The position numbers were made by a program, and so were the translations under genes. A DNA stretch of 64,000 nt from NCBI GenBank assembly GCA_002269645.1, contig NIVC01003920.1:5652-69651 (forward strand). The letters are read 5' to 3'. How positions within the stretch are numbered: the first letter of the stretch is position 1; every line of letters starts with the position of its first letter. The DNA is from Macrostomum lignano. Taxonomy: Eukaryota. Below are positions 6,613 to 61,275 of this stretch, piece after piece. The notes beneath the pieces are model-generated. The model was given only the letters and a program-made list of their open reading frames with translations, was not told where the DNA came from and ran no database searches.

Positions 6613-6695
6613 CCAATATTACCATATTCTTGTAGTTCCCATAGCCATAGTTTTAACAAAAAGTCTAGGAAACAAAATATTTTGAATCAAGAATA

Positions 6696-11700: not shown

Positions 11701-11952
11701 TCCATTTTTATACTTTGCTTTTTTATATTGCAATAAAACCTATAGAAATTGACATTGCACTTTAGTTACTACTTTAGCATAATTTTGCATATTATTAAAT
11801 TATTACAAGTATATCTTCATTTATATCTTTTTCAGAATTTTATATGCTTCCTTGTAAATGTTGTTCATCTTTGTAAGTAAATATTTAAATAGTTTTTTAG
11901 TCAGCTGTATTTGCTATATCATGCTCAGTTTCTCTTATGACTAACATTTTAG

Positions 11953-31140: not shown

Positions 31141-33370
31141 GAGGTTGACAGCTGGTGGCATGGACAAAGGGTGACTGGTCGGAGCAGAGTCGTTAGCATG
31201 AATGAGGAACGATCGGCGGTCAGACGATTAGACCCGACCATGGCGACCAGGTTCTTGAGCTCAAAGCGGCGCATCTGCATGCAAGGCGAGACGGCTCGAT
31301 TCGCGACCATCTGCTGGCTGCCGCGGAGAGACGGGTGCGAGTTGCGAAAGTGCAGCTGGTTGGCAAGGCCTCCGCGAGGCCGATTGCGAGGCTGCGTCCG
31401 CTAATCACGAAAGGGGGCTTGAGAACTGAGTAGTTGACATTTTTGGCCAAACTTTAATTTATTGAAAAAATTCTGCGATTTAGCGATCATTTCCTTAACT
31501 TCGACTAACCGTTGCATGCGTTTCGATTTCGATGTTTTCAGCTTCAAGCTATTTTGGTGATGGGATAACGCGCTATATTTTTCTTTTTGTGGCTTTTGAG
31601 AGTTTTGCTTCCCTGCGCATTAAATCCAGTTTGGTTCTAACGCATTGTGTTTTTTCATGTCGGCTGTCTATTTTGGGAGTTTTTGTTCTGTTTTTTGTGT
31701 TTGTTTTCTGTTTATGTGTTTTTTGTATTTCTTTGTTTTTTGGCGTTGTTGCGAAGACGTTTTGCATACTCTGTTCGGTTAGTTTTCCCATTTTCAGCGT
31801 TTATCCCCTTTGCTCATTTCATCGCACTGTACGCTACGTTTCAGGTTCGATCCCGTTTGCTAACCCAGTTCGAATATGTATCGCATCCCCGTGATTCGTT
31901 TACTAACCTAGTTATTTGATCCTATTTTCACTTTGTCATTTTGTCGAGCGTATTTCATCCTAGCGATTTAACTTTATTCCTGAAAAGTACGCGGTACGAT
32001 GATAATTGAATGTTTCCATTTTTAAGATCCTTGTTCGAGGTGCTCTTTGTTGTTGGCATGTGCTCATGCCAAGAAGGGAGGTATGGATTGAAGAGGAAAG
32101 GTTTTGCTTATTTCATTGTACGTCTGTACTATTACTCATCATTTGCCTATTTTACCTGCCCCCTCCGCGCCTCACGCCACCTTTCTCACTCCCCATTCTG
32201 ATTGGTTAACGTACGAGTACATAGTAATTCATGCACATTTACACCCCCCCCTGTGTCAACCCCGCCTTCTACTTAATAAATTGAGTAAAATATACCTAGC
32301 AAGACTAGACGGCGTGTACCCCTTTTGATTTGTTGTCTGCTACAACTGTCAAATGCGAGGCCAGCCGCCAAGTGGTGCATTCTCGATTCTTTGGATTCTC
32401 TTGTCAACATAGTAAGTATAAAAAATTAACAAACGTTTATACTTGGGGCAGAAACCGAAATTGATACTATTTCTGGGACGCCCCGCACATATTTTCATGC
32501 ACCTATAAGCTATATTTATTGTATAAAAAATATCACCCGGTATGCATTTGAATCTGCGGATATATTTATTATTCGATTATTTTTCTAGCCAAACAGTTCG
32601 GCAGCAGATAGGGACTACTTGCTATAGCCAAGCCTCATGTGCAAGCAGCGAGAGATGGAACGAGCCATAGGAACCTGGAATTTGACAAGAAACTTTCCTA
32701 CAATCATCGTGCTCAATAATTTAAGTTTCAGCATTGCATGGCTGGGAGCACTGAAAATTGCATCTTTCCCTCGAATATTAAATAGCAGAAAATTTCCACC
32801 GGCGGTATGCGAACGAGCTGCCAAGCTGCAGCCTCGCAATTACGGACAATGAGAGTTGAAACTGCAGGTTTCATCTGCAATCAATCTGCCTTGCAATTTA
32901 AGGAGCTATTTCCCTTCAACTCGAATTGCAGACTGAATCGTTGCGAGCTACACTTGGCCCTGACTAATTACTGACACGTCAGTTATGCTCGTGAAATGGC
33001 TAGGATTTAAAAAGATATGGTGGGGCAGATTTGGACATGAAACTGCTAACAAACCTGATGAACTGAGGATACGCATGCTTCAGTCCTAAACCATCGGCCA
33101 GATACTGTGTTTTCCGAGTCCTGCAGTTTCAGCCAGTGAGAGTTGCTCACTTGCGGCAATCACTCAGTTCCTCTGATCAGAGAGCGGGCATTGGCTAGCA
33201 GCTCACGCAGCAGGTTAAAGCTTTTCCCTCTGGGGATAAATCCAGATCCAGAATCCCACACAGAGCTTTCTATTCATTGAGCTTCAAATCTTATCGATAG
33301 ACTGAACTTGCAATTTCGCTGTTAAAAGCAATTTCTCTCGCCTAAATTCTGCCGAGTCACTTACAGAGTG

Positions 33371-39300: not shown

Positions 39301-42300
39301 CGACTCGGAGACGGTCTACCATGTGAGTAACTTACTGCAGAATGCGGGTGCTGGATTTACCGCGGCAGAATAATTCCATGCAGTTGCTTTTGCCTTATCT
39401 GTCACTGGGACGATCATATTGCTACCCAAAGTCAGTTAATCGACCATTTTACTCGTATTTAACTTGAAATCAATTCAACATGAATGCAGCTGTGTGAGCA
39501 GGAACTGAGACTGAGTGATTGAGCTGCCGTGAATAAACCCCCGCAGACGTCCCAGGAGCTGGAGACCGCGCTCCAACGAAGAAACCTCACCAACTACCGG
39601 AAAGCGATTTACGGCCGCGATGCAACTGAGGTGATCGCCAGCTCGCTGGTACGGCTGGGGTTTTTAATTGCAACTTGATTCTCTGACGATTTTGCTCACG
39701 AACTGCAGCTCGAACCATTTCGCCCTTTTTTCAGCGCAACAACTATCGAGTTTTCGTGGTCGTTCGCGATGCTTCCGATGAGCTTCCCAGCAAGCGGCTC
39801 GAATGCATTGTAATTCTGGCTTGCAGTTTGACTTAATGAGGAACTGGGAGTAGCTAGGAATTGCTCAAGGGATTTTTATGATAAGTTAACGTGGCTTTTC
39901 AATTCACATCAGAGAGATTCGAAGATGACAATGGCTGGTCTTCAGAAAAAATCGGCTTCAACTGGAACTGTTAGGCCTCTTCACCTGGAAGCTTAACGAA
40001 TACGAGCTAGAAACTTATAGAGATTTATCGTTCGATGACTCAATAAATGACTGACTCGTGCACAATATTGAAATTTTTCTCTGAAGCCAATCCAGACATT
40101 TTTTCGTTCGAAATTGAGGTGCTCGTCGGAACCAAGGCACGGAGCACGGGGTATGAGGTTTCGAGGTACCCACGTTAATTAAATATCAAGGGGCTCATGA
40201 AAAATGTAATATTTTATTCTGGGCATAATCTTTTAGTGGTGACCTGGAAGTTTTTCGAGTATTAAATAATTCACAGATTTCTATTTACCCCGAGCAAAAC
40301 ATTTTGGTTCCATGCGGAAACAAATGTTAAAATTTCAAATTTCCAATTTCGAAAAAAAATTTGTCGTGACGCAATACTTGTGCCAAAATAGCATCTCGCT
40401 TAGAGCTTTTTCGGGCTCCTTGGCTCCATGTGAAAGGATCCCTGTGAAAAATACCTGAGCCAGGATTAGCGCTTCATTCCATTCATTCTTCTGTGATGAG
40501 AGCACATTGTGCGGTAGTCTTGTCAAAGTAACTGCCTCGATGGCACAAACCCTGCAGATTTACAGCCTCAGGGCCTACGGCATGAAGTACTTCTGGATTC
40601 AATTGGGATTTCCGGACTCTGCCACAGCGTCGTCGCAGGACAGCTGCACCGACTCGGAGCGGGCCCGGAGCCTTGAGGGCGCCGTGGAGTTCGACACGCC
40701 CGTCATGGAGCCCGGCCTGCCGGAGGCCCGGGTGGGCATCGCTGGCAAGGTGAGGCTCAGATGAGCAGCCATATTGACTGATTTATTCTTAATATAGAGT
40801 CAAAGCGTCCGGTACGCGAATTGCTGATCTCAAAGATAAAGCCAAACACTTTTTGTTGCTGAAGTCTTATTGGAAGTTGAATTTTGTCTCAAAATTTCAC
40901 AGGACTTTTGTTCAGGTCCTGTTCGAAAGCCCGAAAATAATCGCCTCCCTGCTCCCCATCAGCTGCTTCTGGTCGGCTCACAAAAACTATAAAGATCAAA
41001 AGAGATGGCAAATTATTGAAGGTTCTAATAAAGACTTACTTGACCTTCAATGTTGTTCAACCTTGGTGAGTGTGAGCTTCAGAGAGGGTTTACCGGCTAG
41101 AAAGTACATCATGTTCCCAATCTGCAGACGCTGGGCCAGTTGTACGCCGACTTCCTGGCCTCCAGACCGGCCGGGGCGAGCGCCACCCCGATAAAGTCGG
41201 TCTCCGGCTTCGACCTGCGCTTCGACGCCGCGATGGCGGCCGCTCTGGCTTTGAATTCCAGCCTGCAGACGGAGGCCTTCCAGGCCAGCCCACAGCTGGC
41301 GAACTCCAGCTTCAAGGCCCGCCTGTTCCGCAGCCTGCTGTCGCTGGACTTTCTCGGACTGTCAGTGAGCGAAAGACCAAGGGGCATTCCGTTCCTTTGA
41401 TTTCACTTGTGGCGGGTTAAATGCCAAGGAGCAAAAAAAATCATTACTGGATGCCTTGGAACAAATCCTGATATTTCATTGTTGTAAAGGTTTCAGAGCA
41501 CCTTCTGACTGATGCGCCATTTTATTTTACATCCTAGACGATTAATTTTGGTGCACCAGAAAGACACCTGTATTACTAACTTCTTCCGGTACTGCTTCAA
41601 CACAGGAAATACTACTTGTGCTTGCATTATTCTCTACCATTTACACAGTGCAGCTGGGATACCACAAAGGCTGTTTTATACACAAGCGAAGCAGACCTTA
41701 CATTGGCCAAAAAACTGGATCGTCTAACAACATCCCGTCTACACCAATCCTCTCAGGGTCCAGTGAGGTTTGACCGGCGAGGGGACAGGCTGTCTCAAAT
41801 TCGATTTTATCAGCTCAAAAGTGAGAACTGTTATTTTTGCTGCTATTTGCCACTGTAGGCTGTGTACCAAGTAGCAAGTAGGGAGCTAAAATATCTGCAA
41901 TCCTATTTGCCACTGTAGGCTGTGTACCAAGTAGCAAGTGGGGAGCTAAAATATCTGCAATCCTATTTGCCACTGTAGGCTGTGTACCAAGTAGCAAGTG
42001 CGGAGCTAAAATATCTGCAATCCTATTTGCCACTGTGGACTGTGTACCAAGTAGCAAGTGGGGAGCTAAAATATCTGCAATCCTATTTGCCACTGTAGGC
42101 TGTGTACCAAGTAGCAAGTGGGGAGCTAAAATATCTGCAATCCTATTTGCCACTGTAGGCTGTGTACCAAGTAGCAAGTGCGGAGCTAAAATATCTGCAA
42201 TCCTATTTGCCACTGTGGACTGTGTACCAAGTAGCAAGTGGGGAGCTAAAATATCTGCAATCCTATTTGCCACTGTAGGCTGTGTACCAAGTAGCAAGTG

Positions 42301-45300
42301 CGGAGCTAAAATATCTGCAATCCTATTTGCCACTGTAGGCTGTGTACCAAGTAGCAAGTGGGGAGCTAAAATATCTGCAATCCTATTTGCCACTGTAGGC
42401 TGTGTACCAAGTAGCAAGTGCGGAGCTAAAATATCTGCAATCCTATTTGCCACTGTAGGCTGTGTACCAAGTAGCAAGTGGGGAGCTAAAATATCTGCAA
42501 TCCTATTTGCCACTGTAGGCTGTGTACCAAGTAGCAAGTGGGGAGCTAAAATATCTGCAATCTTATTTGTCACAGACCTCAAAAGAAACCTGGTTGCAAC
42601 ATTTGACCCAACTGAAGGCAACGTCACTTGGCTTGAGGACCTGTGGTTCATCGGTGAGTTTCCTCTGGTTGGGGTGGCCGAGTATCACCTAATCAATACG
42701 TAAAGTCTAGCTCGTTTAATACATTATTTTCAATTTTAGCTCATAATTTATTCTGTTGGAAATTCAGTCTGCTCGTTTGCTGAAAAGGCGATCTGCATCG
42801 AGAGAAGAGGTGCCGATTTCACTGATCCTGAGCGCAAGCACGCGCATAAATAACTCATCCCCCTTGCAGTCTGAATCACGCACGCGCCAGTCTGAAGCGC
42901 AGATTTGCTGCCATGCACCCGCTAAGTCTAATGGGACGCGTTGTCCGCCACACCTTTTTGACCCCTCCGTTTTCAATTCGCTGCAGTAGATGCTGCAGAA
43001 ATTCACGTGCTGCCAAAAAGATTCGCATGCACTTTGCTTTCAAGAGTCCCATTCTGGCCCTCAATCCAGGCGGTCAGCCCCCATTGGACACCCCAGAAGT
43101 GATCATTGAGGACATCAGGCTCAGCCTTCCCGCCACGACTGCCATCGCGTCAATCTCATCGCTGGGCATGGCTCTGTCCGTGGCGGCGGTCGCTGTGAAC
43201 GTTCACTACAGGGAGCTGCGCCTCATCAAGATGAGCAGCCCGCTGGTGAACAATGTGATTGGCGCTGGCTGCCTTATGTGCTACGCCTCCTGCATAGTGA
43301 TGGCCGCGAACTCGCACTGGTCTGTGAGCACCGCCCTGTGCTGGGCGCAGACGGCCCTGCTGACCCTCGGCTACTCCGCCGCCTTCGGCGCCATGCTGGC
43401 TAAAACCTGGTGGGTGCACCGCATCTTTGCGAACCTCAAGCTGCGCAAAGCGGTAAGTCAAGTTGCTTGAGCCCGACTGGGTAAATCTGAGATACCAAAA
43501 ATTCCCGTTTACTTTTTGCGTGCAGCCCGTGCAGAGCCGGTACCTGCTGCTCTTCATCGTGGTGGTGGTGGTCGCTGACATTGTGCTCCTAGCACTGTGG
43601 GCCGGCCTGGACCCGTTGGCTTTGCAAGCTAGCGAGTATCTTGTTGAGGTGAGAATTGTACGAGTAATTTTGCATTGTAGCTCGTATATTGGAACCTTTG
43701 TTGCTGCGCTGAAGTGTGATCAGCTTCACGTCAGGTTGCACTTCCGTTATTTTCGGACTTAGGAAAGTGACCAAAAATTTTGAGCTTATAAAAGGGACTG
43801 AGTTTCGAGCAGGTGAAACGTCCGGTGTGCAAAAGGCTAGCACCACTGGTGGCGAAAATTTCACACTTTCCAGGAGCGATCGGACGGGTCAACTCTGAGC
43901 GCCAGAATTCTGCTGTGCGCCAGCCGCAACCAAGCCGTCTGGCTGGGCGCCGAATTCGGAAAAAAGGGTGAGCTCACTGTCTCCGTGAAATCCTGCGCTG
44001 CTGCAGGCCATATAACATCATCCATCGAAACTATCTGCAGATTTTTATCAGGTGGATGTCGAGCCTGGGTCTAGGGGCGTTGGGACGCACAGAGTAGAGC
44101 CTGGGACTAGAGGCGCTGGGACACACAGAGTAGAGCCTGGGTCTAGGGGCGTTGGGATGCACAGAGTAGAGCCTGGGTCTAGAGGCGTTGGGACGCACTG
44201 AGTAGAGCCTGGGTCTAGAGGCGTTGGGACGCACTGAGTAGAGCCTGGGTCTAGAGGCGTTGGGACGCACTGAGTAGAGCCTGGATCTAGAGGCGTTGGG
44301 ACGCACTGAGTAGAGCCTGAGACTAGAGGCGTTGGGACGCAATGAGTAGAGCCTGGGTCTAGGGGCGTTGGGATGCACAGAGTAGAGCCTGGGTCTAGAG
44401 GCGTTGGGACGCACTGAGTAGAGCCTGGGTCTAGAGGCGTTGGGACGCACTGAGTAGAGCCTGGGTCTAGAGGCGTTGGGACGCACTGAGTAGAGCCTGG
44501 ATCTAGAGGCGTTGGGACGCACTGAGTAGAGCCTGAGACTAGAGGCGTTGGGACGCAATGAGTAGAGCCTGGGACTAGAGGCGCTGAGACGCACTGAGTA
44601 GAGCCTGAGACTAGAGGCGCTGGGACGCAATGAGTAGAGCCTGGGACTAGAGGCGTTGGGACGCACTGAGTAGAGCCTGAGACTAGAGGCGTTGGGACGC
44701 ACTGAGTAGAGCCTGAGACTAGAGGCGCTGAGACGCACTGAGTAGAGCCTGAGACTAGAGGCGTTGGGACGCACTGAGTAGAGCCTGAGACTAGAGGCGT
44801 TGGGACGCAATGAGTAGAGCCTGGGACTAGAGGCGTTGAGACGCACTGAGTAGAGCCTGGGTCTAGAGGCGTTGGGACGCACTGAGTAGAGCCTGGGTCT
44901 AGAGGCGTTGGGACGCACTGAGTAGAGCCTGGATCTAGAGGCGTTGGGACGCACTGAGTAGAGCCTGGATCTAGAGGCGTTGGGACGCACTGAGTAGAGC
45001 CTGAGACTAGAGGCGTTGAGACGCAATGAGTAGAGCCTGGGACTAGAGGCGCTGAGACGCACTGAGTAGAGCCTGAGACTAGAGGCGTTGGGACGCACTG
45101 AGTAGAGCCTGAGACTAGAGGCGTTGGGACGCACTGAGTAGAGCCTGAGACTAGAGGCGTTGGGACGCACTGAGTAGAGCCTGAGACTAGAGGCGTTGGG
45201 ACGCACTGAGTAGAGCCTGAGACTAGAGGAGTTGGGACGCAATGAGTAGAGCCTGGGACTAGAGGCGTTGAGACGCACTGAGTAGAGCCTGGGTCTAGAG

Positions 45301-47703
45301 GCGTTGAGACGCACTGAGTAGAGCCTGGGTCTAGAGGCGTTGGGACGCACTGAGTAGAGCCTGGATCTAGAGGCGTTGGGACGCACTGAGTAGAGCCTGG
45401 ATCTAGAGGCGTTGGGACGCACTGAGTAGAGCCTGAGACTAGAGGCGCTGGGACGCACTGAGTAGAGCCTGAGACTAGAGGCGTTGGGATGCACAGAGTA
45501 GAGCCTGGGCCTAGGGGCCGTTGGGACGCACAAAGTAGAGCCTGGGCCTAGAGGCGCTGGGAACCGCCATGGACCTTATGAGTACAGTTACGAGTATGGC
45601 AGCTACTGTAGATCTCGAATGTCTCAAGCGTAGGACGCACTGACGATACTCACTACTATAGATATATGAGTAAATGAAGGTCAGGCCTATAGTAGCGGGT
45701 CTGGCAATCCCGAAAGATTTTTCGCGTGTTTGCGGCCAAGGTAGAGCAAAAAATTCTGAATTCGCGATACAAGCCGAGGTTAGCGGGAGAGGCCAGCCAG
45801 ACGGAGAAATAAATGGGTCCATGAGGTCCATGGTCCGCCAATTGCCCGCAGACGAGTTGCCCGTCGAGATTTGCCCGCAGTGCAATTTGCCCTCGAGTGA
45901 ATTGCCCGCGAGCGAATTGCCCACTGAGTTTTTTCCCGCCGAGGATTGCCCGCAATGCTTTTTTTCCAGCAGCGCATTTGGCAGCTATAGCTTCTGTCTG
46001 CATTGCCCCCCCCCCAAAAAAAAATATGCATTTGATATGCAGTTACTATCAAAACGTTTTGATCGGGTAAATCTCTTTATTAAGACCTACAAAGCATTGG
46101 GGAGACAATGCAGACAAAATCTGCCGCGTGGCTAAATGCGCAACTGCTTATTGCTTGACGTACACCGCTGAGATTAGGAGCCAGGATCGATGTTATCGAA
46201 TGAAGTTTCAAAAACTGGGTGCTCCAAATACCACCAATAATGCATAGAGCTCTTCGCCGGATGAACCGCAGGGATTCTCCTGTTCGCTGCCATCATCTTC
46301 GCCTGGGAGACTCGCACCGTGCAGCTGGATGCCGTCAACGACTCAAAGAAGATCGGAGTCTGTGTGTACAACACCACCGTGCTGGCGCTCATCGGGGTCG
46401 TCGTGGCCTTCGTGCTGCCCGACTCCAGCTATGAGCTGCGGCTGATTCTTGTCGCCATTTGCACCTGCGGCTGCGCCACCATCACGCTGGCCCTGGTGTT
46501 CGGCACGAAGGTGAGCTGCCCCGCCCGTGGCACCTGGGGCTCTGCTTCTCTGGGGTGCTTGCTTTATACCTAGAAGAGAATCCCCTTAGTCCCCCTCCCG
46601 CTAGTCTGTTGTTAATCCATCTGTAGCCGATGTATCTCAACCCCCTCCCCGCTAGTCTGTTGTTAATCCATCTGCAGCCGATGTATCTCAACCCCCCTCC
46701 CCGCTAGTCTGTTGTTAATCCATCTGCAGCCGATGTATCTCAACCCCCCTCCCCGCTAGTCTGTTGTTAATCCATCTGCAGCCGATGTATCTCAACCCCC
46801 CTCCCCGCTAGTCTGTTGTTAATCCATCTGCAGCCGATGTATCTCAACCCCCCTCCCCGCTAGTCTGTTGTTAATCCATCTGCAGCCGATGTATCGCAAC
46901 CCCCCTCCCCGCTAGTCTGTTGTTAATCCATCTGTAGCCGATGTATCTCAACCCCCTCCCCGCTAGTCTGTTGTTAATCCATCTGCAGCCGATGTATCTC
47001 AACCCCCTCCCGCTAGTCTGTTGTTAATCCATCTGCAGCCGATGTATCTCAACCCCCTCCCCGCTAGTCTGTTGTTAATCCATCTGCAGCCGATGTATCT
47101 CAACCCCCTCCCCGCTAGTCTGTTGTTAATCCATCTGCAGCCGATGTATCTCAACCCCCCTCCCCGCTAGTCTGTTGTTAATCCATCTGCAGCCGATGTA
47201 TCGCAACCCCCCTCCCCGCTAGTCTGTTTTTAACCCATCTGCAGCCGATGTATCGCGACCCCCTCCCCGCTAGTCTGTTGTTAATTCATCTGCAGCTGAT
47301 GTATCGCGACCCCCTCCCCGCTAGTCTGTTGTTAATTCATCTGCAGCCGATGTATCGCAATTCCCCTCCCCGCTAGTCTGTTGTTAATTCATCTGCAGCC
47401 GATGTATCGCAATTCCCCTCCCCGCTAGTCTGTTGTTAATTCATCTGCAGCCGATGTATCGCAATTCCCCTCCCCGCTAGTCTGTTGTTAATTCATCTGC
47501 AGCCGATGTATCGCAATTCCCCTCCCCGCTAGTCTGTTGTTAATTCATCTGCAGCCGATGTATCGCAACCCCCCTCCCAGGTGCACGCCATCTGGCGCCT
47601 CAGGCCCAACCGCATCGATGCCCAAGAGGCTCTGGAGACGGTGGACGGCCAGACCTCAAAGGCCAACACCGCCGGGTCGACGAGTGCGGCCGACACTTGC
47701 TAA
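33371..47703 (+). CDS. GABA-B-receptor-like class C GPCR (Venus flytrap + 7TM_3), 14 exons, 757 aa
   Basis: Exons 33371-33589, 33795-33968, 39152-39322, 39547-39648, 39735-39809, 40558-40749, 41128-41364, 41757-41820, 42576-42653, 43070-43452, 43526-43648, 43874-43967, 46272-46510, 47581-47703. All GT-AG, phases consistent, 2274 nt. Signal peptide; LLLGPAFS, YPYFVRL, GPVRFDRRGDR, IKMSSPLVN, AKTWWVHRIF, AWETR, NDSKKIG motifs. Confidence 0.9.
34096..38544 (+). mobile_element. Ty3/Gypsy (Mag-like) LTR retrotransposon, full-length but disabled, in GPCR intron 2
   Basis: TG...CA LTRs 34096-34388 and 38348-38544; 5-bp TSD ATCTC at 34091-34095 and 38545-38549; PBS-like TGGCGTCGC at 34390; PPT AAGGGGGAAGG at 38337-38347. 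Gag with double zinc knuckle, protease LDTGA, RT YIDDV, RNase H DAS/TDHKPL, integrase DNG...ERLVRTVKE. In-frame TAA at 36472 and frameshifts near 37236 and 37855. Confidence 0.96.
38930..39055. repeat. ~28-bp repeat, ~4 copies, intronic
   Basis: AAATAGGCCGTCATCGGCTCCGTCTCTC-like units. Confidence 0.8.
41846..42575. repeat. 60-bp minisatellite, ~12 copies, filling GPCR intron 8 up to the acceptor
   Basis: Unit CTATTTGCCACTGTAGGCTGTGTACCAAGTAGCAAGTGGGGAGCTAAAATATCTGCAATC; last unit ends TTATTTGTCACAG. Confidence 0.97.
44062..45570. repeat. 36-bp minisatellite, ~41 copies, GPCR intron 12
   Basis: Unit GAGTAGAGCCTGGGTCTAGAGGCGTTGGGACGCACT. Confidence 0.97.
45838..45956. repeat. Degenerate ~15-bp repeats of the (A/G)ATTGCCC motif, typical of MITE subterminal arrays
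   Basis: About 8 TT(G/C)CCC motifs in 120 bp. Confidence 0.5.
46597..47577. repeat. 51-52-bp minisatellite, ~19 copies, GPCR intron 13 up to the acceptor
   Basis: Unit GCTAGTCTGTTGTTAATCCATCTGCAGCCGATGTATCTCAACCCCCCTCCCC; last unit ends CCTCCCAG|GTGCAC. Confidence 0.97.
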
Positions 47704-48321: not shown

Positions 48322-48663
48322 TCGTCAGCTGTCATGGCCTTCTAGCCAATCCCCAGTTTTCATGTACTTCTAGCCAATCATCAGCTGTCAAGGATTTCTA
48401 GCCAATCATCAGCTGTCATGGACTTCTAGCCAATCATCAGCTGTCAAGGATTTCTAGCCAATCATCAGCTGTCATGGACTTCTAGCCAATCGTCAGCTGT
48501 CATGGACTTCTAGCCAATCATCAGCTGTCATGGATTTCTAGCCAATCATCAGCTGTCATGGATTTCTAGCCAATCATCAGCTGTCATGGATTTCTAGCCA
48601 ATCATCAGCTGTCAAGGATTTCTAGCCAATCATCAGCTGTCATGGATTTCTAGCCAATCATCA
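48322..48663. repeat. 28-bp minisatellite, ~12 copies, each with CCAAT and CAGCTG
   Basis: Unit TCTAGCCAATCATCAGCTGTCATGGATT. Confidence 0.93.
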
Positions 48664-49519: not shown

Positions 49520-49740
49520 AAGCAATCAACGGCCGCGCTGCTTTCTACTCGCTGAGAAATTCACTGAAATCAACGGCCGCGCTGCTTTCTACTCGCTGAG
49601 AAATTCACTGAAATCAACCGCCGCGCTGCTTTCTACTCGCTGAGGAATTCACTGAAATCAACGGCCGCGCTGCTTTCTACTCGCTGAGAAATTCACTGAA
49701 ATCAACGGCCGCGCTGCCTTCTGCTCGCTGAGAAATGCTT
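49520..49740. repeat. 44-bp minisatellite, ~5 copies
   Basis: Unit AATCAACGGCCGCGCTGCTTTCTACTCGCTGAGAAATTCACTGA. Confidence 0.93.
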
Positions 49741-50009: not shown

Positions 50010-52805
50010 ATGACCGCCTGGCGGCTGCCCTGCTGGCTCCTCACTGCCGCCCTGTGCTTGCGCGCCACATCAGTGGCCGGATACACAAGTGAGTCCAGCG
50101 CAGTATTTAATGCAAAAGCACTTCATGCTTGGACCACTGGCTTATTATTGTACCAAGATCATTGAAACTACATCAGCAGGAAAGTAGCTCGTAGTTCGAT
50201 TGGAGGTTGGCTGACAAAGTTACAGTTTTGACAAAAAGCATTTTGGAGACCGGTAAGACGCAAAATCACAAAGTGACTCTAAGCCGAAAGCACATCGAAT
50301 GGAAATTTGCAACAAAAATATCAACCAAAAATACAGAAATCCGATTGATTTTGAAAAAAAAATATGTGGGAAAATTAGCTCCTCTGAGAGCGGCCCGGCA
50401 CTGCATGGTTCTTCGCCTTTAAACAATTAAACGCTATTATCTAGCACGGGTGATTTAGCGACTCAATTTCAGCTCTTTCGAGCTATTCCAGCGGCTTTGA
50501 GAGCCTTCAGAGGAACATTTAGGCCAGTCTGATAGTTTTAAATGTACATCACGTCGACTCATGTATCCAGCGGTGCTGATCTCATCCGTAATGCTCAGAG
50601 CACATCCATTCAATCGCTCACAAAATCAGAGTCAGATTGCTACTTCCCGTTTCTCTACAACGGCACTGAGTACTCCTACTGTACTCGAAATGCGTACCAC
50701 GTGCTCTGGTGCTCGCTCGACCGGGTGTACAAGGGCCGCTGGGCTGTCTGCGGACCGGAGGTGCCCAAGAAAGTGCTCGACAGCATACGGGCAGCCGTTG
50801 ACGAGGTCGGCAAGGAGAAGGCCAAACTGGCTCAGGAACAGAGCGACATCGACAAAATGGCGAAGTCCGTAGCGCAGCTCTCGGCTGCCAACCAGATGGG
50901 TGAGTGCAGCTTCTTTTCTTTTCTTTCTTTTTCTTCAGGGCTCCTCCGTATCCGGCTCTGCCGATCTAGAGGGGGACAGGCGCTCCATGCTGCGAAGTAG
51001 GCCGATGATGGCCTCCGGGACTCCATCAAGTCCTCGGAGGCGAGCCCATGGACTGCCCGGTAGCGGTCGCCACGGGGGCAGTCGTGTAGGATGTGGCGCA
51101 CCGTGTCCTCCGCGCCGCAATCGGGACAGGCAGCAGAGTCCGCGATGCCAAGCCTGTGGCGGGTGCTGAAGTTAATCATGCTGGCGCCAGCGCGGAGCTG
51201 ATTTATCAGCACCTGGAGGCGGCGTGGGAGGTGGGCCGGTGGTGGTTTGGCCGGTGCCGCGTAGTCGGCGTCCATGGCCCGGTGGCGGCGGCGGCGGAGG
51301 GCTGTCCTAGCCGCTTGAAGCTGGAGCGGCACGTGTTGTTGGTCGAGGGCGGCCGCTTCCGTCGGTAGCGATGGTGACAGACGGGGGGCATCGTTGGAGA
51401 GAAGTGAAAAAACTTGGCTTACGTTGGCAGTAGCCAGAAAACCCTTGCACGAAAACTCCAACTGTAGCGACTTTTATATTTGACAACGATTTTATAAAAA
51501 GGACTAAGAACGCGAAGTAACAACTGTACGAGTGTAAATGAGTACGCGTCAATGTACGCACAACGAAAGTACTGAGAGGAGATAAAATAACCAGAGCCGC
51601 GCAACACCAAAAATACACACAAACAACCCAGCCCCAACCCCAAACAAGCGACACCCGCCACACGCCACCACAAGAAGGAGCCTTAGGGCCTCGCGGATGG
51701 CGACCAGCTCCGCCGTAAAGCTGCTGCACCAGGCTCCGGCGGGTACGCAGTGGCGGGTGCCAGGGGCCTCCCATTGAGCGATGGCCGCTCCCCGCCGTTC
51801 CGCGAGCCTTCGCCGACGGACCCGTCGGTCCAGAGTGCAGCATCTGCTACAGCTGCTGCTGGCTTTGGAACATGAAATTCGCTCTGAAACATATTTAAAT
51901 TATATTGACCAAGTACCGTTCCTGGGTCGGGGCTGGTAGTTCAAGGTTTGGGTCGGCAATTTCCAGATGAGGGCTGTGTTCCTGGTTCAATTTAGAAATC
52001 CTACCTACATGTACCTACCTAGTATTTTTCCACTACACTTACTGTACACGAATTTCGCCTCGATGCCGCGTCAGATTGTCACTCCTGCGCCCTCTCATCC
52101 ACTTCCTGCCTTGCCTGCAGCCCACAGCAACAAATCGGCAGCCATCAACGCACTCGACCAACGCCTGGCGGCCCTCAACCGCTCCCTGTTGCAGATGGAG
52201 CTGGAGCAGCGCAACCTGGATCATGTGAGACGAACATTGGAAGCTCAATTTTGATTCGTTGAAAGCCCCGGCTCTGCAAAATCAACAATACTAACTAGAT
52301 TTTAATCGCCGATTCACAGCGTGCGGCCAATCAGGAGTCGCTGCGACCGCTGGAGATCGGCACGATGATCCTGCTGACCGTGTCTGTCATCACCATGGGT
52401 GTCCTGCTGTATGTATTCCACTGCTGCTCCAGCCGCAAGGGTGACGGCGGCGGCCCGAGCCCGTCGCTGCCGGAGACGCCGCAGCTGAGCTGTCTTGCGC
52501 TGCGCCGGGTGCAGCCGCCTGCAGATTCGACGGCCGAATCGGAGGTGGCAGCGGCGTCGACGCGACAGGTGGAGAGCGCAAAGAAATTTCCCGGCCACTT
52601 CTATCACCTGACCGTTGATGAGGTGGACGAGGAGGCTGGCGATGAGGAAGAGACCGAGGATGATGATGAAGTGGATACGGGAGACGACGCCAGCAGCGAG
52701 CAGCACAGCAGAGCAGCAGCGGCCCTGTCCTCGGCCGCCCCTCCAGCCCAGCAGGCTGCTGGAGAGGCCAGCCGCAAGCGGGGCAGCAGGTTCCTCAACA
52801 GGTGA
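50010..52805 (+). CDS. Type I membrane protein: signal peptide, fibronectin type II domain, coiled coil, TM, acidic cytoplasmic tail (312 aa)
   Basis: Exons 50010-50088, 50630-50899, 52121-52224, 52320-52805; phases consistent, 939 nt. FN2 pattern CYFPFLYNGTEYSYCTRNAYHVLWCSLDRVYKGRWAVC; heptad-like LDSIRAAVDEV...LDQRLAALNRSLLQMELE; TM MILLTVSVITMGVLLYVF; DEVDEEAGDEEETEDDDE. Confidence 0.85.
50910..51860 (-). mobile_element. I/Ingi-group non-LTR retrotransposon 3' fragments (RNase H, CCHC, A-rich tail) in intron 2 of the FN2 gene
   Basis: Minus strand: ALWTDGSVGEG and PAGAWCSSFTAELVAIREAL (RNase H, 51680-51850); INQLRAG..CPDCGAEDTVRHILHDCP (CCHC, ~51070-51210); (AAAAG)n tail at 50910-50935. 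An unrelated segment at ~51390-51680 interrupts it. Confidence 0.8.
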
Positions 52806-52934: not shown

Positions 52935-53980
52935 GTTAGTTCTCATGCAAGCTGCTGCACCTGAACAGAATTCCACCGATTAGTTCTCATGCAAGCTGCT
53001 GCGCCTGAACAGAATTCCACCGATTAGTTCTCATCCAAGCTGCTGCGCCTGAACAGAATTCCACCGATTAGTTCTCATGCAAGCTGCTGCGCCTGAACAG
53101 AATTCCACCGATTAGTTCTCATCCAAGCTGCTGCGCCTGAACAGAATTCCACCGATTAGTTCTCATGCAAGCTGCTGCGCCTTAACAGAATTCCACCGAT
53201 TAGTTCTCATCCAAGCTGCTGCGCCTGAACAGAATTCCACCGATTAGTTCTCATCCAAGCTGCTGCGCCTGAACAGAATTCCACCGATTAGTTCTCATCC
53301 AAGCTGCTGCGCCTGAACAGAATTCCACCGATTAGTTCTCATCCAAGCTGCTGCGCCTGAACAGAATTCCACCGATTAGTTCTCATCCAAGCTGCTGCGC
53401 CTGAACAGAATTCCACCGATTAGTTCTCATCCAAGCTGCTGCGCCTGAACAGAATTCCACCGATTAGTTCTCATCCAAGCTGCTGCGCCTGAACAGAATT
53501 CCACCGATTAGTTCTCATCCAAGCTGCTGCGCCTGAACAGAATTCCACCGATTAGTTCTCATCCAAGCTGCTGCGCCTGAACAGAATTCCACCGATTAGT
53601 TCTCATCCAAGCTGCTGCGCCTGAACAGAATTCCACCGATTAGTTCTCATCCAAGCTGCTGCGCCTGAACAGAATTCCACCGATTAGTTCTCATCCAAGC
53701 TGCTGCGCCTGAACAGAATTCCACCGATTAGTTCTCATCCAAGCTGCTGCGCCTGAACAGAATTCCACCGATTAGTTCTCATCCAAGCTGCTGCGCCTGA
53801 ACAGAATTCCACCGATTAGTTCTCATCCAAGCTGCTGCGCCTGAACAGAATTCCACCGATTAGTTCTCATCCAAGCTGCTGCGCCTGAACAGAATTCCAC
53901 CGATTAGTTCTCATCCAAGCTGCTGCGCCTGAACAGAATTCCACCGATTAGTTCTCATCCAAGCTGCTGCGCCTGAACAG
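52935..53980. repeat. 44-bp minisatellite, ~24 highly homogeneous copies
   Basis: Unit GATTAGTTCTCATCCAAGCTGCTGCGCCTGAACAGAATTCCACC. Confidence 0.97.
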
Positions 53981-53989
53981 AGCCCACAA

Positions 53990-54101: not shown

Positions 54102-54940
54102 CTACTAGGCTATACAACCTTCTGCTAGGCAAAATTTTAATCGATACAAAAAAATTACAGGCTCCAATGCTTTACTCGTACTAAATTATTTGGGTGAAAG
54201 TTGAACTCGTACCTACAGTACTCAAGCCAAGAGATATTTAGTTAATTAGCTGTAGCACATGTCATTTCTGTATTATGATATGAAATATAAAGTGCAATCA
54301 TCACTGAAATAACAGGCTATGATAAGCTCTACGAGCCTACCAACCACTGCAGTTACTGGCGAATGATATCGCACGCACGGTACAGAAAATGCACAGTAAA
54401 ACAAAACAAAATAAAATTCAAAGAAGAACCCAAATTCGATTTTATAACATTTACTAACTATAGAGCAGGATCTAACTCAGTTCGACAATAGCCTTGTATT
54501 TTCTTTAATAATATGTAAGTCTTCATTGAAACTTAGCATTACAGAGCATGGGGAGGGGGTGGCTGTCTGTGCCAATCCAGCACGTCAGGCAGCAGCTTCA
54601 ATCTTTACTGAGATGAAAAACCGCAGGAACGGGCAATGAGAAGCATTTCATTAGTCTACGAAAATGTTAGAATTATTTATTCACTAACGCTGATACGAAA
54701 AGTCTCGGCCCAGTTCCGACTAAAATAAAAAAGTGCTGGCAAAAAATTACATCAAAAGCACAGCTAAGCAAACCCTACAAACAGCTGAATGGCTCGAGCT
54801 GAAGCTCTGAGCCACAGGACTGTCTTGGCTTGTCAGACTTGACCTAATTTCATTCGCATTTCTATGCTGCATTTTTGAGAACAAAAATGCCTCTTCACTC
54901 TACAACAAAAACTTGTCAGCCTGGGTCTCACAGCAGCAGC

Positions 54941-57449
<2,509 letters not shown>

Positions 57450-57693: not shown

Positions 57694-58549
57694 TTGGGGT
57701 TGCAACTAATTATATTGTAGCAAGTTTCTAAAGGACTACAAAGAAATTGTTCAGCCATCACCGAGTTAGCATTTATATAACCATTTTTGATAGTTAGCAT
57801 AAAATTGCAAAAATCAAACATTTTGCATGCCTTTCATAGAAAAAAATTAAATATTCTATAGCTCGTATTCTATGCATATGAAGTATACCATAGTTATCAA
57901 TACAAGCTTCATATAACATGATCTTGATATTCTATTCCTACAAATGCTATTTTCATAGTGTAGTTATCTTATTAATGAAAATAAAGATCAAGATCAGTTC
58001 ATTAATACTTGAAATGACACAAAAATATCTGATGATCTAATTTTATTTTTGATATTATACCTATAAATAAATACTATATTTAATGCTGATATACATTCAA
58101 ATTTTAATGCAAAATCAGGCTTTTTTAATTAAATGTTTTAGTCATTAATTGATTGATATTTCATAACCTTTACTCTGCTAAGAAACTGATTTTTCTCTAC
58201 TAGTTAAATTTTATTTGTTTTGTTCTAGGTTAATTATGTAATTTTATTATACTAGTATTAGATAACTTTTTGGAAATTACTATGTCAAGAATACTATCAA
58301 GCATTCAATTTTAGGTTAATTAAAGTCATTCTTAATTGTCAATCATTCTAAAAAGAAGGCACAAAAGTTCCTATTGTCCTCATTTATTGTACCCCATTAA
58401 CTTTATCTCACTATTTATTATAAGCGTGAAAAATTATATTTTTAGAAAACTTTTTTATATCATATGGTTATACTTAAAATACAATTTTATATATTAATAG
58501 GTCTAATAATATATATAGACAAGGGCATCAAAAGACATCAAAGGGCATC

Positions 58550-59450
58550 TTTCACAATGAAGTTGAAATCTTCACCAACTTGCTTAGCTACAATGGCTAC
58601 CCTAGGAACTTTGTGTTGAAAATTATTGAGACTTTTCTCAATGACAAACTGATGGAACCTACTTAGATGAAAGTTTGTGAATCCACCTCTGATTGTCCTT
58701 TGATCACTTTACCTTTTTTGGGGTTTGTTCTATTGAGTTCAAAAAGAAGATTGAAAAGCTGTTCTATTAAGACTTAAACACTCAAATCCATGTTGTGTTT
58801 TGCACTGAAAAGGTTGCTAAGTTTGTCTATAGGCTGAAATCTAGTGTTCCTTGTCCTCTTGTGGCAGGTGTTGTGTACAAATTTATTTGCTCTGAGGACC
58901 AGAGCATTTCCTATATTGGGAAAACTAAATGACATCTATACACAAGTTAGAGAGCAGTTAGAGAGCACTGGCTAAGCAACTGCCATTAACGAACACCTGC
59001 TAACTTGCAATAGTTGTTGTGTTGCTGACCCACACAAGATGATTACGGCTATTGATCTTTTCAATAGAGATCACATGCCCTGCCTATTAGAAGCCCTGTA
59101 GATTAAAATGAGATAGCTTACATTAAATAATTAACTTGCAATAGTCAAATTAGTCAAATTACTAAAATAGTCAACTCTGCACATTTTAGTTTACCTTGCT
59201 AATAACCAGACTGGATTGAAACCAACATGTACTCTCCCCTTACCAATAATGCTTCTACTCTTGATTAAACCATCAAGCTTTTAATGTACAAGCTTTTAAA
59301 CCATCAAAATTACTGTATACACTTTCATACTTCTCTCCATTCACTATATATACTATTTGTGTTTAATAATTTGGTTTAAATAGATTTTGACCCTGAAGAT
59401 GTCTAATAATAATATTGGACAAAATGCATTGGCAACTCAAATAAATAACT
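58550..59450 (+). mobile_element. Penelope-like element 3' relic (RT C-terminus, GIY-YIG, decayed hammerhead)
   Basis: FHNEVEIFTNLLSYNGYPRNFV; LKSSVPCPLVAGVVYKFICSEDQSISYIGKTK*HLYT...REH; CCTGAAGATG...GGACAAAATGCATTGG then AATAAA at ~59391-59444. Confidence 0.8.
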
Positions 59451-61275
59451 AATACTTAATGTTGATATTGACTTATACTCAAACAAATTTATCTACTTTT
59501 TATTAAGCAAGCCACTTTATCTAAATATAGGCAATAGGCCTACCATAGTTCAGAAAGTGACATATAGCTAGGATTCCTCATTGTATAACAAGGATACTTG
59601 CCATTTTTAGCATATATCAGTATATATCTCGGCATACATAACATAGTGGAAACATTGTGTCAATGACACATTTTTAGTCTAAGAATACAAACAAGGTCTT
59701 GTATTTATTTCTGGTATTGGACCCAATGTACACAAATACACAATCCAAATGATGGACCCTATTAGAAAAATTTGCTAAATGGCAAACAGCCATCTGGAAC
59801 ATTTTCAAAATGACCTTGTAGCACACTGTTTTCTATGACATAGCGCAATGCAGTGCCACACATAAAAGACATGCAACAAAATACAAGTGTGTATAACGAT
59901 TACAATAATTTTAAAGAAAGTGTCTTTCTAATTAAAGGATTAAATATAAGACTAAGAGTGGTTTTTTAGAGATATATAGTAGAATATCTCAATATGATTT
60001 TTTTAGTAGCTAGCTGTATTGTTAGATTAGTTTTAGTCAAAGATTACATTGCTGAGTGATATTAAAACTGTTAAAAAAGTGGCAACTGCAAATAAGGTCT
60101 TTTATTGCATGTTGTAACTGCAAAAAAAGGTTTTTTGTCACAACTATGGTCCCTTAAGTTAACATGGCCCATGTACCTTGGAGAGTGACCCCTTGGCATG
60201 TTTTTGCTAGACCCTTGATGCGCGTCTGTACATTTTCAGAATTTATTCCAATAGGGACTATGGGGGAAATATAAGTAAAAAATTAAGAGACTCCTAATTT
60301 TCTAAACAAAAAGCTTAAAGAATATCAATAAAACTAGGGCCTATAAGAAAGACAAAACATATTAAAAGATAAACATTAGGTCTGCTTCCTTTAAAAATAA
60401 AAAATGATTTTGTCCTAAAAAATGAACATCTTTTTATCTCTATGACTATGTAAGTATGGGGCATTTTCTAAAAAACGACCTCCTAAATTTTTCTAATAAA
60501 TATAGTTTCCTGTCCTTCCAATTAAACAATACTTGATTTATATGTACATGTTATCTACTGCACTAGGTAGTTATAACTTGATATATTTTGGATAATACCA
60601 TTGACATTGAGCCAATTTTTTATTATACCTCTAGCTTTTGCTATATATCACTGTACATTAAAAGTTTCTACTAAGCTTTTATTTTATAAATTTTGTGTAC
60701 CATTTTTTTATACACTTGGGTGGGGGGGGTTCGTCTGTGTTGGCTCGGTCGAGATTTAATTCGTTCGTCTCAGCCGTTCAAATCAGTGCGGCTTCTACGA
60801 TTCAAACAAACTTAAGCAAAGATCTCAGCTTGCAGATGACGGGGAGCTCCGGCTGCTGAGTTCCCCAGGCTCAGAGAGAGGGTAGCTGTGGTCGCGGTTG
60901 AGCAGTCTAGTTTTGCCGACGTCCAGAATGCCGAATGCAGAAATTTGTAGCAGCCGAAATGGGGAAAACTTCAAAATAAGCTATATATTTAAACTAAGTT
61001 TGTCGAGATTGTTGCTGATAGTAGTAGTTTGCTGCCACCACCGCGTTTATACGCGGGAAAAGCTCTCTAAAGCTCAAAACTAGCTCGATTTGGCTCTAGG
61101 ACTTCTCTTGAGACCGCTAGGCGTCAAATAATAAAGCTTCCGAGGTGGTCACGAAGGCCAAGACACCGTTTCAACACCAGAGATTAATTGGCTGGCGTTA
61201 CAGGGGCCAGGTAGCTGAATAGACTTATTGTTATTAACTGTTGCACGAGCCACAAGCAATGTACTATGCTGTTAT

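What the first reader, a model, noticed from the sequence alone, without database searches (positions are those of the whole stretch)
50010..52805. Unusual FN2-coiled coil-TM-acidic tail receptor architecture
Seen: a clean 4-exon ORF with one canonical FN2 domain on a coiled-coil stalk, a single TM followed by CC, and a very acidic tail. Known: FN2 domains are best known from vertebrate fibronectin, MMP2/9, mannose receptors, SEL1L and seminal BSP proteins, and bind collagen/gelatin or choline lipids. I do not recognise this combination. Inference: an oligomeric collagen- or lipid-binding surface receptor.
Basis: partly seen in the sequence, partly recalled or inferred. Interest (0 to 1): 0.7.

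Follow-up and report, generated by a model that had tools for sequence, protein, structure and literature searches.

The report
Flatworm membrane protein with FN2 head
This is a real, expressed gene of the flatworm Macrostomum lignano, already in GenBank as a hypothetical protein. It encodes a membrane protein with one collagen/choline-lipid-binding FN2 module on a coiled-coil stalk, an arrangement found nowhere outside this lineage and of untested function.

Summary
Four GT-AG exons on the + strand (50010-50088, 50630-50899, 52121-52224, 52320-52805) encode 312 aa. The parts are a signal peptide, one FN2 domain (Pfam E 3e-9), an unbroken 12-heptad helical stalk, one transmembrane helix ending in Cys-Cys, and a disordered acidic tail.

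The translation is identical to GenBank PAA68839.1, a hypothetical protein of Macrostomum lignano whose annotation is RNA-seq-guided. A 76%-identical homologue lies on an intronless 1-kb contig that matches the exon 2-4 blocks and reads straight through all three predicted junctions. dN/dS is 0.11 overall and 0.006 in the FN2 domain.

A full HMMER scan of 1.84 billion representative proteins found 313 FN2 hits. Among the 150 listed, only that one homologue matches over the whole length. Four others extend somewhat past FN2, without detectable stalk homology in the two tested.

The FN2 is the short seminal-plasma (PDC-109) type, and all four phosphorylcholine-pocket aromatics are conserved.

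My best reading is an oligomeric type I surface or endosomal receptor presenting FN2 pockets about 13 nm above the membrane. The ligand, oligomer order and tissue are untested. It is a lineage-restricted domain shuffle of modest interest.

The parts
50010..50088 (+). Exon 1: start codon, signal peptide (residues 1-24, nt 50010-50081; predicted cleavage VAG|YT) and the first base of codon 27. GTGAGT donor at 50089.
   Evidence: 50010 is the first start codon after a stop in this frame. The n/h/c regions and the -3/-1 rule were judged by eye. The homologue has the equivalent VAA|YT.
50630..50899 (+). Exon 2: FN2 domain (residues 30-67, nt 50638-50751) and the first half of the stalk. Acceptor aaaatcAG at 50628-50629; GTGAGT donor at 50900.
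   Evidence: Pfam fn2 E 3.3e-9. PDC-109 1h8p E 1.4e-9 with a gapless 41-residue alignment. L002 117-389 aligns to 50627-50899. This is the only FN2 motif in all six frames of the window.
50900..52120 (+). Intron 2 (1221 nt). It carries a degenerate fragment of a non-LTR retrotransposon ORF2 3' end on the minus strand.
   Evidence: Minus-strand ORFs 50832-51461 and 51683-51892 contain a CPDCG...HILHDCP zinc knuckle and a WTDGS motif. Pfam gave nothing significant, so the identification rests on my own knowledge of LINE ORF2 C-termini.
52121..52224 (+). Exon 3: second half of the coiled-coil stalk (residues 117-151). Acceptor cctgcAG; donor GTGAGA.
   Evidence: L002 389-492 aligns to 52120-52223.
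50767..52346 (+). Coiled-coil stalk, residues 73-160, spanning exons 2-4 (coordinates include introns 2 and 3). Conserved N-glycosylation sequons at N120 and N136.
   Evidence: Single heptad register with 14/25 a/d positions hydrophobic; 2/20,000 shuffles reach this. Substitutions against the homologue are 1/25 at a/d positions and 11/63 elsewhere. AlphaFold2 helix 73-188, pLDDT 80-95. Sequons.
52320..52805 (+). Exon 4: end of the stalk, transmembrane helix (residues 164-186, nt 52356-52424), Cys-Cys (nt 52422-52427), cytoplasmic tail (residues 188-312), acidic cluster (residues 250-278, nt 52614-52700), stop TGA at 52803-52805.
   Evidence: Kyte-Doolittle 2.26 over residues 166-184 and charge counts. 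The tail is disordered in AlphaFold2. L002 491-910 aligns to 52317-52736.

Best explanation
This is an expressed, selectively constrained Macrostomum lignano gene for a type I membrane glycoprotein.

Shown here:
- A signal peptide, so after cleavage the mature N-terminus is essentially the FN2 module.
- That module is the compact seminal-plasma (PDC-109/BSP) type, with cysteine spacing C-13-C-9-C-12-C. It keeps all four aromatic residues that form the PDC-109 phosphorylcholine pocket.
- About 88 residues follow in one uninterrupted heptad register, continuous as a helix with a single transmembrane segment.
- A juxtamembrane Cys-Cys and a disordered, strongly acidic cytoplasmic tail with conserved motifs.

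Inferred:
- The stalk forms a parallel coiled coil, so two to four FN2 pockets are held about 13 nm above the membrane. Beta-branched residues at d, Gln at a and Asn at d lean towards a trimer. This would give avidity for a repetitive ligand, either denatured or fibrillar collagen or the choline head groups of a membrane or lipoprotein surface.
- The Cys-Cys is palmitoylated.
- The acidic cluster, with Thr residues in casein-kinase-2-type contexts, directs adaptor binding or sorting between surface, endosome and trans-Golgi network.

Functionally this would be a type I counterpart of the coiled-coil-necked scavenger and lectin receptors.
For: Gene reality:
- The protein is identical to PAA68839.1, from an RNA-seq-guided annotation.
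- The homologue lies on an intronless contig that aligns to the exon 2-4 blocks and reads through the junctions.
- dN/dS is 0.11 overall, 0.006 in FN2, 0.08 in the stalk and 0.19 in the tail.

FN2:
- Pfam E 3.3e-9.
- The best solved relative is PDC-109 domain a, aligned without gaps over 41 residues.
- PDC-109/a pocket residues Y30, W47, Y54 and W58 (PMC2823774) align to Y36, W53, Y60 and W64.

Stalk: heptad test, conservation of a/d positions, and period-3.5 signal; a long confident helix in AlphaFold2.

Topology:
- Three N-X-S/T sequons (N37, N120, N136) lie on the N-terminal side of the membrane helix. All are kept in the homologue despite S-to-T and R-to-K changes.
- R190 and K191 lie on the C-terminal side.

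Tail: net acidic, with the conserved blocks FHCCS, LPETPQL.CLALRRVQP and FPGHFYHLTVDE.
Against: - No ligand, localisation, tissue or oligomeric state was tested. No expression record for Mlig031717 was found in the text or held supplements of four papers.
- The pocket aromatics are conserved in most FN2 domains, so they do not discriminate between collagen and choline ligands.
- The middle of the stalk (S111, N114, H118, K121 at a/d) is polar and could be a weak point or hinge.
- The tail has no canonical YxxPhi or [DE]xxxL[LI] endocytic motif, so the trafficking role is weakly based.
- The AlphaFold2 model of the FN2 part was poor (pLDDT below 50; the alignment had 2 sequences), so there was no structural comparison of the head.
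Confidence: 0.45

Rival explanations
1. It is an intracellular cargo receptor of the secretory pathway rather than a surface receptor. A lumenal binding domain on a coiled-coil stalk, one transmembrane helix and a sorting tail would resemble ERGIC-53/LMAN1 or the p24/TMED proteins. It would escort a collagen-like or lipid-bearing cargo, for example into gland-cell granules.
For: It has the same type I layout: a binding domain, a helical oligomerising stalk, then a transmembrane helix. Acidic clusters are known sorting signals for cycling between the trans-Golgi network and endosomes (established knowledge from furin and the cation-independent mannose-6-phosphate receptor).
Against: There is no C-terminal KKxx or FF ER-retrieval/exit motif; the protein ends RFLNR. 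There is no sequence relation to L-type lectin or GOLD domains. The tail is long (125 aa), unlike the roughly 12-residue tails of those receptors.
Confidence: 0.15
2. It is a cell-matrix or cell-cell adhesion anchor, or a precursor whose ectodomain is shed to act as a soluble BSP-like coating factor on sperm or eggs of this hermaphrodite.
For: The FN2 is closest to the sperm-coating PDC-109 type. The nearest FN2 relatives are annotated ELSPBP1-like, and one is the coral protein named euphy. Unnamed proteins P0088 and P0127 have a signal peptide, an FN2 and a coiled-coil-like region but no transmembrane segment, so secreted versions of a similar layout exist.
Against: No furin-type cleavage site lies near the membrane. 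The transmembrane helix and tail are under purifying selection (dN/dS 0.15 and 0.19), which argues that the membrane-bound form matters. The gene was not found in the held supplements of two papers on germline- and reproduction-related M. lignano genes, although those files may be truncated.
Confidence: 0.2
3. It is an annotation or reading artefact: the four exons belong to different genes, or the ORF is a chance product next to repeats and a transposon fragment.
For: The gene is bracketed by tandem arrays and has a LINE fragment in intron 2. The exon 1/2 junction needs a specific acceptor.
Against: The homologous intronless contig encodes the same 310-aa protein. It aligns block by block to exons 2-4 and reads ...TACACAA|AGTCCGAC... 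across the position homologous to the exon 1/2 junction. With dS 1.2 and dN/dS 0.11, there are 20 synonymous changes against 1 non-synonymous change in FN2. All introns are GT-AG. The deposited model is identical.
Confidence: 0.02

Closest known systems
Binder-of-sperm / seminal plasma FN2 proteins (bovine PDC-109/BSP1, ELSPBP1)
   Same: The same compact FN2 subtype. It aligns without gaps over 41 residues with identical cysteine spacing, and the WCSLD..Y.GRW..C motif and all four phosphorylcholine-pocket residues (Y, W, Y, W) are conserved.
   Different: BSP proteins are small secreted proteins with two tandem FN2 domains. This protein has one FN2, a coiled-coil stalk, a transmembrane helix and a cytoplasmic tail. 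There is no similarity outside FN2.
Mannose receptor family (MRC1, MRC2/Endo180, PLA2R1, LY75)
   Same: Type I membrane receptors with a single membrane-distal FN2 domain. In Endo180, FN2 binds collagen for endocytic uptake (established knowledge).
   Different: They carry a ricin-type domain and 8-10 C-type lectin domains and no coiled coil. Pfam finds none of these here. The tail motifs also differ.
Cation-independent mannose-6-phosphate receptor (IGF2R) and SEL1L
   Same: Both are type I membrane proteins containing one FN2; weak FN2-only matches to 2v5p, 6um1 and 8kes were seen. IGF2R also has an acidic-cluster sorting tail (established knowledge).
   Different: The FN2 is embedded in 15 MRH repeats (IGF2R) or precedes Sel1 repeats (SEL1L). 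Neither is present here.
Coiled-coil-necked receptors (class A scavenger receptors, CD23, langerin, LOX-1; and the type I ERGIC-53/LMAN1)
   Same: The same working principle: a small ligand-binding head, multimerised and held away from the membrane by an alpha-helical coiled-coil stalk, which gives avidity.
   Different: There is no sequence or domain relationship. Most are type II proteins with C-terminal SRCR or C-type lectin heads, and ERGIC-53 has an L-type lectin head and a short KKFF tail.
Other invertebrate FN2 proteins found here (Acropora and Hydractinia 'ELSPBP1-like' tandem-FN2 proteins, coral euphy, a Branchiostoma 2489-aa protein matched in 19 FN2 stretches; unnamed P0116, P0065, P0088, P0127)
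   Same: The closest FN2 sequences, at 41-53% identity. Some are type I membrane proteins (P0116, P0065, P0003). Some have a signal peptide, an FN2 and a coiled-coil-like region (P0088, P0127).
   Different: None combines a single FN2, a coiled coil, a transmembrane helix and an acidic tail. The stalks of P0088 and P0127 show no detectable similarity to this one.

Membership tests
FN2 domain (Pfam PF00040, kringle-like fold) | Score above the Pfam gathering threshold over the whole model | tested here: met
   37 bits against a cut-off of 22.2, E 3.3e-9, model positions 1-42 of 42.
FN2 domain (Pfam PF00040, kringle-like fold) | Four cysteines in the FN2 pattern, plus the conserved FPF, CT and WC motifs and the aromatic pocket | tested here: met
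   C30, C44, C54 and C67; the sequence CYFPF...YCT...WCS...Y.GRW..C. It aligns without gaps to PDC-109 domain a. The homologue differs at one residue only.
FN2 domain (Pfam PF00040, kringle-like fold) | FN2 three-dimensional fold with 1-3 and 2-4 disulfides | tested here: inconclusive
   The AlphaFold2 model of residues 30-69 had pLDDT below 50 with a 2-sequence alignment. No fold search was run because it would have been meaningless.
Binder-of-sperm (BSP) family | Two tandem FN2 domains joined by a short linker, in a small secreted protein | tested here: not met
   There is one FN2 only, and a transmembrane helix is present. BSP definition: PMC4476173 and PMC2823774 abstracts.
Mannose receptor family | Ricin-type domain, FN2 and multiple C-type lectin domains | tested here: not met
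   Pfam finds no Ricin or Lectin_C domain at E up to 1.
SEL1L / Hrd3 | Sel1 (TPR-like) repeats after the FN2 | tested here: not met
   There are no Sel1 hits. The match to 8kes covers only the FN2, E 0.064.
Parallel coiled-coil stalk receptor (functional class, not a homology family) | A long uninterrupted heptad repeat with a hydrophobic a/d core | tested here: met
   The register is unbroken over residues 76-160, with 14/25 a/d positions L/I/V/M/F (2/20,000 shuffles reach this). Period-3.5 power has p about 0.008. The a/d positions are conserved.
Parallel coiled-coil stalk receptor (functional class, not a homology family) | Actual oligomerisation | not testable with these tools
   No multimer prediction or experiment was available. 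The monomer model gives only a single long helix.

The most novel reading that the evidence does not exclude
This may be a Macrostomum-specific, membrane-anchored and multimerised BSP-type FN2 receptor that recognises choline phospholipids on another cell's surface (for example received sperm, or yolk or egg material), or collagen debris during tissue turnover. That would make it an independently evolved invertebrate analogue of the vertebrate sperm-coating and collagen-uptake FN2 systems, built by fusing an ancient FN2 module to a stalk, transmembrane helix and tail that have no detectable relatives.
Probability: 0.2. Interest if true: 0.5.

Novelty: new variant of a known kind. Interest (0 to 1): 0.3.

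Why it matters
If the reading is right, an ancient small binding module (FN2) has been recruited into a coiled-coil-stalked receptor by domain shuffling in one flatworm lineage. This mirrors the design of vertebrate scavenger and lectin receptors.

It would also give a tractable way to ask what compact BSP-type FN2 domains bind outside vertebrates, because M. lignano has RNAi and transgenesis. The closest FN2 relatives found here are in cnidarians and amphioxus, so this FN2 subtype is much older than the mammalian seminal proteins it is known from.

The finding does not bear on a long-standing open question. The sequence is already public as a hypothetical protein.

Tried and rejected
- Acceptors at 50571 and 50599 for exon 2 were rejected as out of phase with the exon 1 donor.
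- The weak Pfam hits (V-SNARE, SPAM, COG6_N, MCU and others, E 0.02-0.6, all far below their cut-offs) were rejected as coiled-coil noise.
- I looked for full-length relatives three ways: a word-indexed search with the whole protein, the same with the stalk, transmembrane helix and proximal tail only, and exhaustive phmmer on 1.84e9 representatives. Only P0002 was found. Only the best 150 of 313 hits were listed, so weaker FN2-level hits were not inspected.
- I tested whether P0088 and P0127 share the stalk. BLASTP gave no significant similarity.
- I scanned the 149 listed hits for an FN2 followed by a transmembrane segment. Eight were found, none with this layout.
- AlphaFold2 with the 2-sequence alignment informed on the stalk but not on FN2, so no fold search was run.
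- Literature: nothing was found on Mlig031717, on SRR28338165, or on FN2 or BSP proteins in Macrostomum. Hits for 'fibronectin type II' were mostly type III by prefix matching. The gene id is absent from the held supplements of PMC5730564, PMC5816591 and PMC7336406. PMC2374232 is not held.
- The two 44-bp tandem arrays flanking the gene were tested for relatedness and are not related.
Full report
**1. What is in the sequence**

The region is eukaryotic. On the + strand, four exons with canonical GT-AG introns give a 939-nt coding sequence:
- Exon 1, 50010-50088, donor GTGAGT.
- Exon 2, 50630-50899, acceptor aaaatcAG, donor GTGAGT.
- Exon 3, 52121-52224, acceptor cctgcAG, donor GTGAGA.
- Exon 4, 52320-52805, acceptor ttcacAG, stop TGA.

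These rest.

The only detail needing care is the exon 1/2 junction. Exon 1 ends in phase 1, so the more obvious AGs at 50571 and 50599 are out of phase. The acceptor at 50630 is the one that works.

**2. Identity and reality of the gene**

The 312-aa translation is 100% identical over its whole length to GenBank PAA68839.1, 'hypothetical protein BOX15_Mlig031717g1 [Macrostomum lignano]'. The UniRef entry is A0A267F6X6, 'Fibronectin type-II domain-containing protein'. It lies on contig NIVC01001368.1 of assembly GCA_002269645.1. That annotation was built from a genome-guided RNA-seq transcriptome (PMC5730564).

The window itself is not byte-identical to that contig. The gene differs at 5 positions, all intronic, and the flanking tandem arrays differ in copy number. 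The window is therefore another haplotype, duplicate copy or assembly of the same locus.

Independent support comes from P0002. This is a 310-aa protein, 76% identical by BLASTP and 79-80% by other alignments. It is encoded without interruption on a 1008-nt Logan contig from SRR28338165. The contig aligns to the window in three blocks whose ends coincide with my exon 2, 3 and 4 boundaries; exon 1 is too divergent for BLAST to align. Its sequence reads ...TACACAA|AGTCCGAC... straight through the position homologous to the exon 1/2 junction.

Nei-Gojobori estimates are dS 1.20, dN 0.136 and dN/dS 0.11 overall. By region, dN/dS is 0.006 in FN2 (20 synonymous against 1 non-synonymous change), 0.08 in the stalk, 0.15 in the transmembrane helix and 0.19 in the tail. 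This is a functional gene under purifying selection along its whole length.

**3. Anatomy of the protein**

- Residues 1-24 form a signal peptide, MTAWRLPCWLLTAALCLRATSVAG|YT. The homologue has ...SVVAA|YT. This was judged by the -3/-1 rule, not by a predictor.
- Residues 30-67 are an FN2 domain: Pfam PF00040, E 3.3e-9, 37 bits against a cut-off of 22.2, full model length.
- Residues 73-160 are the stalk. All a/d positions fall in one unbroken heptad register from L76 to R160, about 12 heptads. 14 of the 25 a/d positions are L/I/V/M/F; only 2 of 20,000 shuffles reach this.
- The hydrophobicity spectrum of the stalk peaks at period 3.5 (p about 0.008) rather than at 3.6. Against the homologue, a/d positions changed once in 25, and other positions 11 times in 63.
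- AlphaFold2, with only a 2-sequence alignment, predicts one continuous helix over residues 73-188 with pLDDT 80-95 across most of the stalk. The FN2 part scored below 50 and the tail is disordered.
- Residues 164-186 are the only strongly hydrophobic segment outside the signal peptide (Kyte-Doolittle 2.26). They are followed by C186-C187 and R190-K191.
- The tail, residues 188-312, has 25 D/E against 13 K/R. Residues 243-278 have 18 D/E and no basic residue.
- The blocks FHCCS, LPETPQL.CLALRRVQP, FPGHFYHLTVDE and SEQHSRAAAAL are conserved between the two proteins.
- All three N-X-S/T sequons (N37, N120, N136) lie on the N-terminal side of the membrane. They are retained in the homologue despite neighbouring substitutions. 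This fits an extracellular or lumenal ectodomain.

**4. The kind of FN2**

The best solved relative is bovine seminal plasma protein PDC-109 (1h8p), E 1.4e-9. Query residues 28-68 align without a gap to residues 22-62 of its domain a. The cysteine spacing is the compact C-13-C-9-C-12-C. By contrast, the gelatinase FN2 alignments need two-residue insertions, and the fibronectin matches are only partial (query 28-61).

The PDC-109/a phosphorylcholine pocket is Y30, W47, Y54 and W58, with Y60 on the rim (PMC2823774). With the gapless offset of six, these correspond to Y36, W53, Y60 and W64, all conserved. The rim residue corresponds to V66.

These aromatics are shared by most FN2 domains, including collagen-binding ones. 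They show an intact pocket but do not identify the ligand.

**5. Relatives and distribution**

An exhaustive phmmer scan of 1.84 billion representative proteins gave 313 hits at E up to 1e-3. Among the 150 listed, only P0002 aligns over the full length (query 7-301). Nearly all the others match only about residues 28-70, often many times per protein. Four listed hits (P0077, P0085, P0088, P0127) have alignments reaching query residue 129-150.

The named top hits are the following:
- A Branchiostoma belcheri protein matched in 19 FN2 stretches.
- Acropora and Hydractinia 'epididymal sperm-binding protein 1-like' tandem-FN2 proteins.
- The coral protein named euphy.

A word-indexed search with the stalk, transmembrane helix and proximal tail alone found only P0001 and P0002 among 5.8 billion clusters.

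Among the 149 listed hits, eight have a hydrophobic segment after an FN2. Examples are P0116, with two FN2 domains, a Ser/Thr/Ala-rich spacer and a transmembrane segment, and P0065, with four FN2-like repeats, a short coiled coil and a transmembrane segment. None has the layout seen here.

Two unnamed proteins, P0088 and P0127, have a signal peptide, an FN2 and a coiled-coil-like region without a transmembrane segment. Their stalks show no detectable similarity to this one. The non-FN2 two-thirds of the protein therefore have no detectable relatives outside this pair.

**6. How it most likely works**

Shown: it is a type I membrane glycoprotein with a membrane-distal, pocket-intact BSP-type FN2 on a long heptad-repeat helix.

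Inferred:
- The helix forms a parallel coiled coil. Beta-branched residues at d, Gln at a and Asn at d lean towards a trimer by the GCN4-variant rules, but this is weak. The stalk would be about 88 residues x 1.5 Å, or about 13 nm.
- Several low-affinity FN2 pockets would then act together on a repetitive ligand, either collagen or gelatin, or choline head groups on a membrane or lipoprotein.
- The juxtamembrane Cys-Cys is a likely palmitoylation site.
- The acidic cluster, with T249, T264 and T271 in S/T-x-x-D/E contexts, resembles the casein-kinase-2-dependent sorting clusters of furin and the mannose-6-phosphate receptor. No canonical tyrosine or dileucine motif is present.

The design principle matches coiled-coil-necked scavenger and lectin receptors, which are type II, and ERGIC-53, which is type I. 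There is no homology to any of them.

The rivals are an intracellular cargo receptor, an adhesion anchor or shed sperm/egg-coating factor, and an annotation artefact. The first two cannot be excluded without localisation and expression data. The third is effectively refuted by section 2.

**7. Comparison, novelty and score**

The protein is a bona fide member of the FN2 domain family. It is not a member of the BSP, mannose-receptor, SEL1L or IGF2R families, because each of their defining additional domains was tested and is absent.

The sequence is already public as a hypothetical protein. No paper in the searchable library mentions it, and it is absent from the held supplements of three M. 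lignano papers.

I rate it a new variant of a known kind: a lineage-restricted domain shuffle placing an old module in a new, sensible receptor architecture. Interest is about 0.3. It is a well-supported and tidy finding but not surprising for a metazoan extracellular module, and no function is yet attached.

**8. Context in the window**

- The gene sits between tandem arrays: 44 bp x 4.8 copies at 49524-49736 and 44 bp x 23.8 copies at 52936-53981. The two units are unrelated.
- Further arrays lie upstream at 44061-45562, 46591-47578 and 48325-48663.
- Downstream, on the minus strand (54722-57204 in L001-derived coordinates, a few bases less in the window because array copy number differs), is a 495-aa pyridine nucleotide-disulfide oxidoreductase gene.
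- Upstream are a class C GPCR exon (42913-43470) and a Ty3/gypsy-type pol region (34405-37969).

Noticed in passing
window 39439-63073 compared with L001 (GenBank NIVC01001368.1): The window is not identical to the GenBank contig that carries the same gene. Identity is about 99.7% around the gene. There are five differences inside the gene (50115, 50131, 50138, 50170, 51637), all intronic, and the tandem arrays differ in copy number. The window looks like another haplotype, duplicated copy or assembly version of the M. lignano locus.
   Followed up: partly
window 50930-51890, minus strand (intron 2 of the FN2 gene): Degenerate fragment of a non-LTR retrotransposon ORF2 3' end. It has a WTDGS RNase-H-like motif and a C-terminal CPDCG...HILHDCP zinc knuckle, split over two ORFs. 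Pfam gave no significant hit, so the identification rests on motif knowledge.
   Followed up: partly
window 44061-45562, 46591-47578, 48325-48663, 49524-49736, 52936-53981: Five tandem arrays with periods of 36, 52, 28, 44 and 44 bp and up to 42 copies. The FN2 gene is bracketed by the two 44-bp arrays, whose units are not related to each other (104 of 300 shuffles score as well). The 500-aa minus-strand 'ORF' at 44031-45533 is an artefact of the 36-bp array.
   Followed up: partly
window 34405-37969, + strand: Ty3/gypsy-type retrotransposon pol region (aspartic protease, RT, RNase H, integrase), split over three ORFs and therefore probably interrupted. A further RT fragment lies at 30225-31148 on the + strand.
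   Followed up: no
window 42913-43470 (+) and 41843-42573: An exon encoding the start of a class C GPCR seven-transmembrane domain (7tm_3, E 3e-22). Just upstream is a roughly 60-bp periodic array, whose ORFs give only spurious repeat-driven Pfam hits.
   Followed up: no
window about 54722-57204 (L001-derived coordinates), minus strand: Neighbouring gene for a 495-aa pyridine nucleotide-disulfide oxidoreductase (Pyr_redox_2 and Pyr_redox_dim; of the dihydrolipoamide dehydrogenase / glutathione or thioredoxin reductase type), convergent with the FN2 gene.
   Followed up: no
window 4001-12000 and 58001-60000: AT-rich blocks (GC 0.29-0.36) within a window that is otherwise 0.46-0.58 GC.
   Followed up: no
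proteins P0088 (162 aa, ENA) and P0127 (261 aa, Logan), not in the window: Unnamed proteins from unknown organisms with a signal peptide, one compact FN2 and a long coiled-coil-like region but no transmembrane segment. They have a similar layout in secreted form, with no detectable stalk homology to the window's protein.
   Followed up: partly
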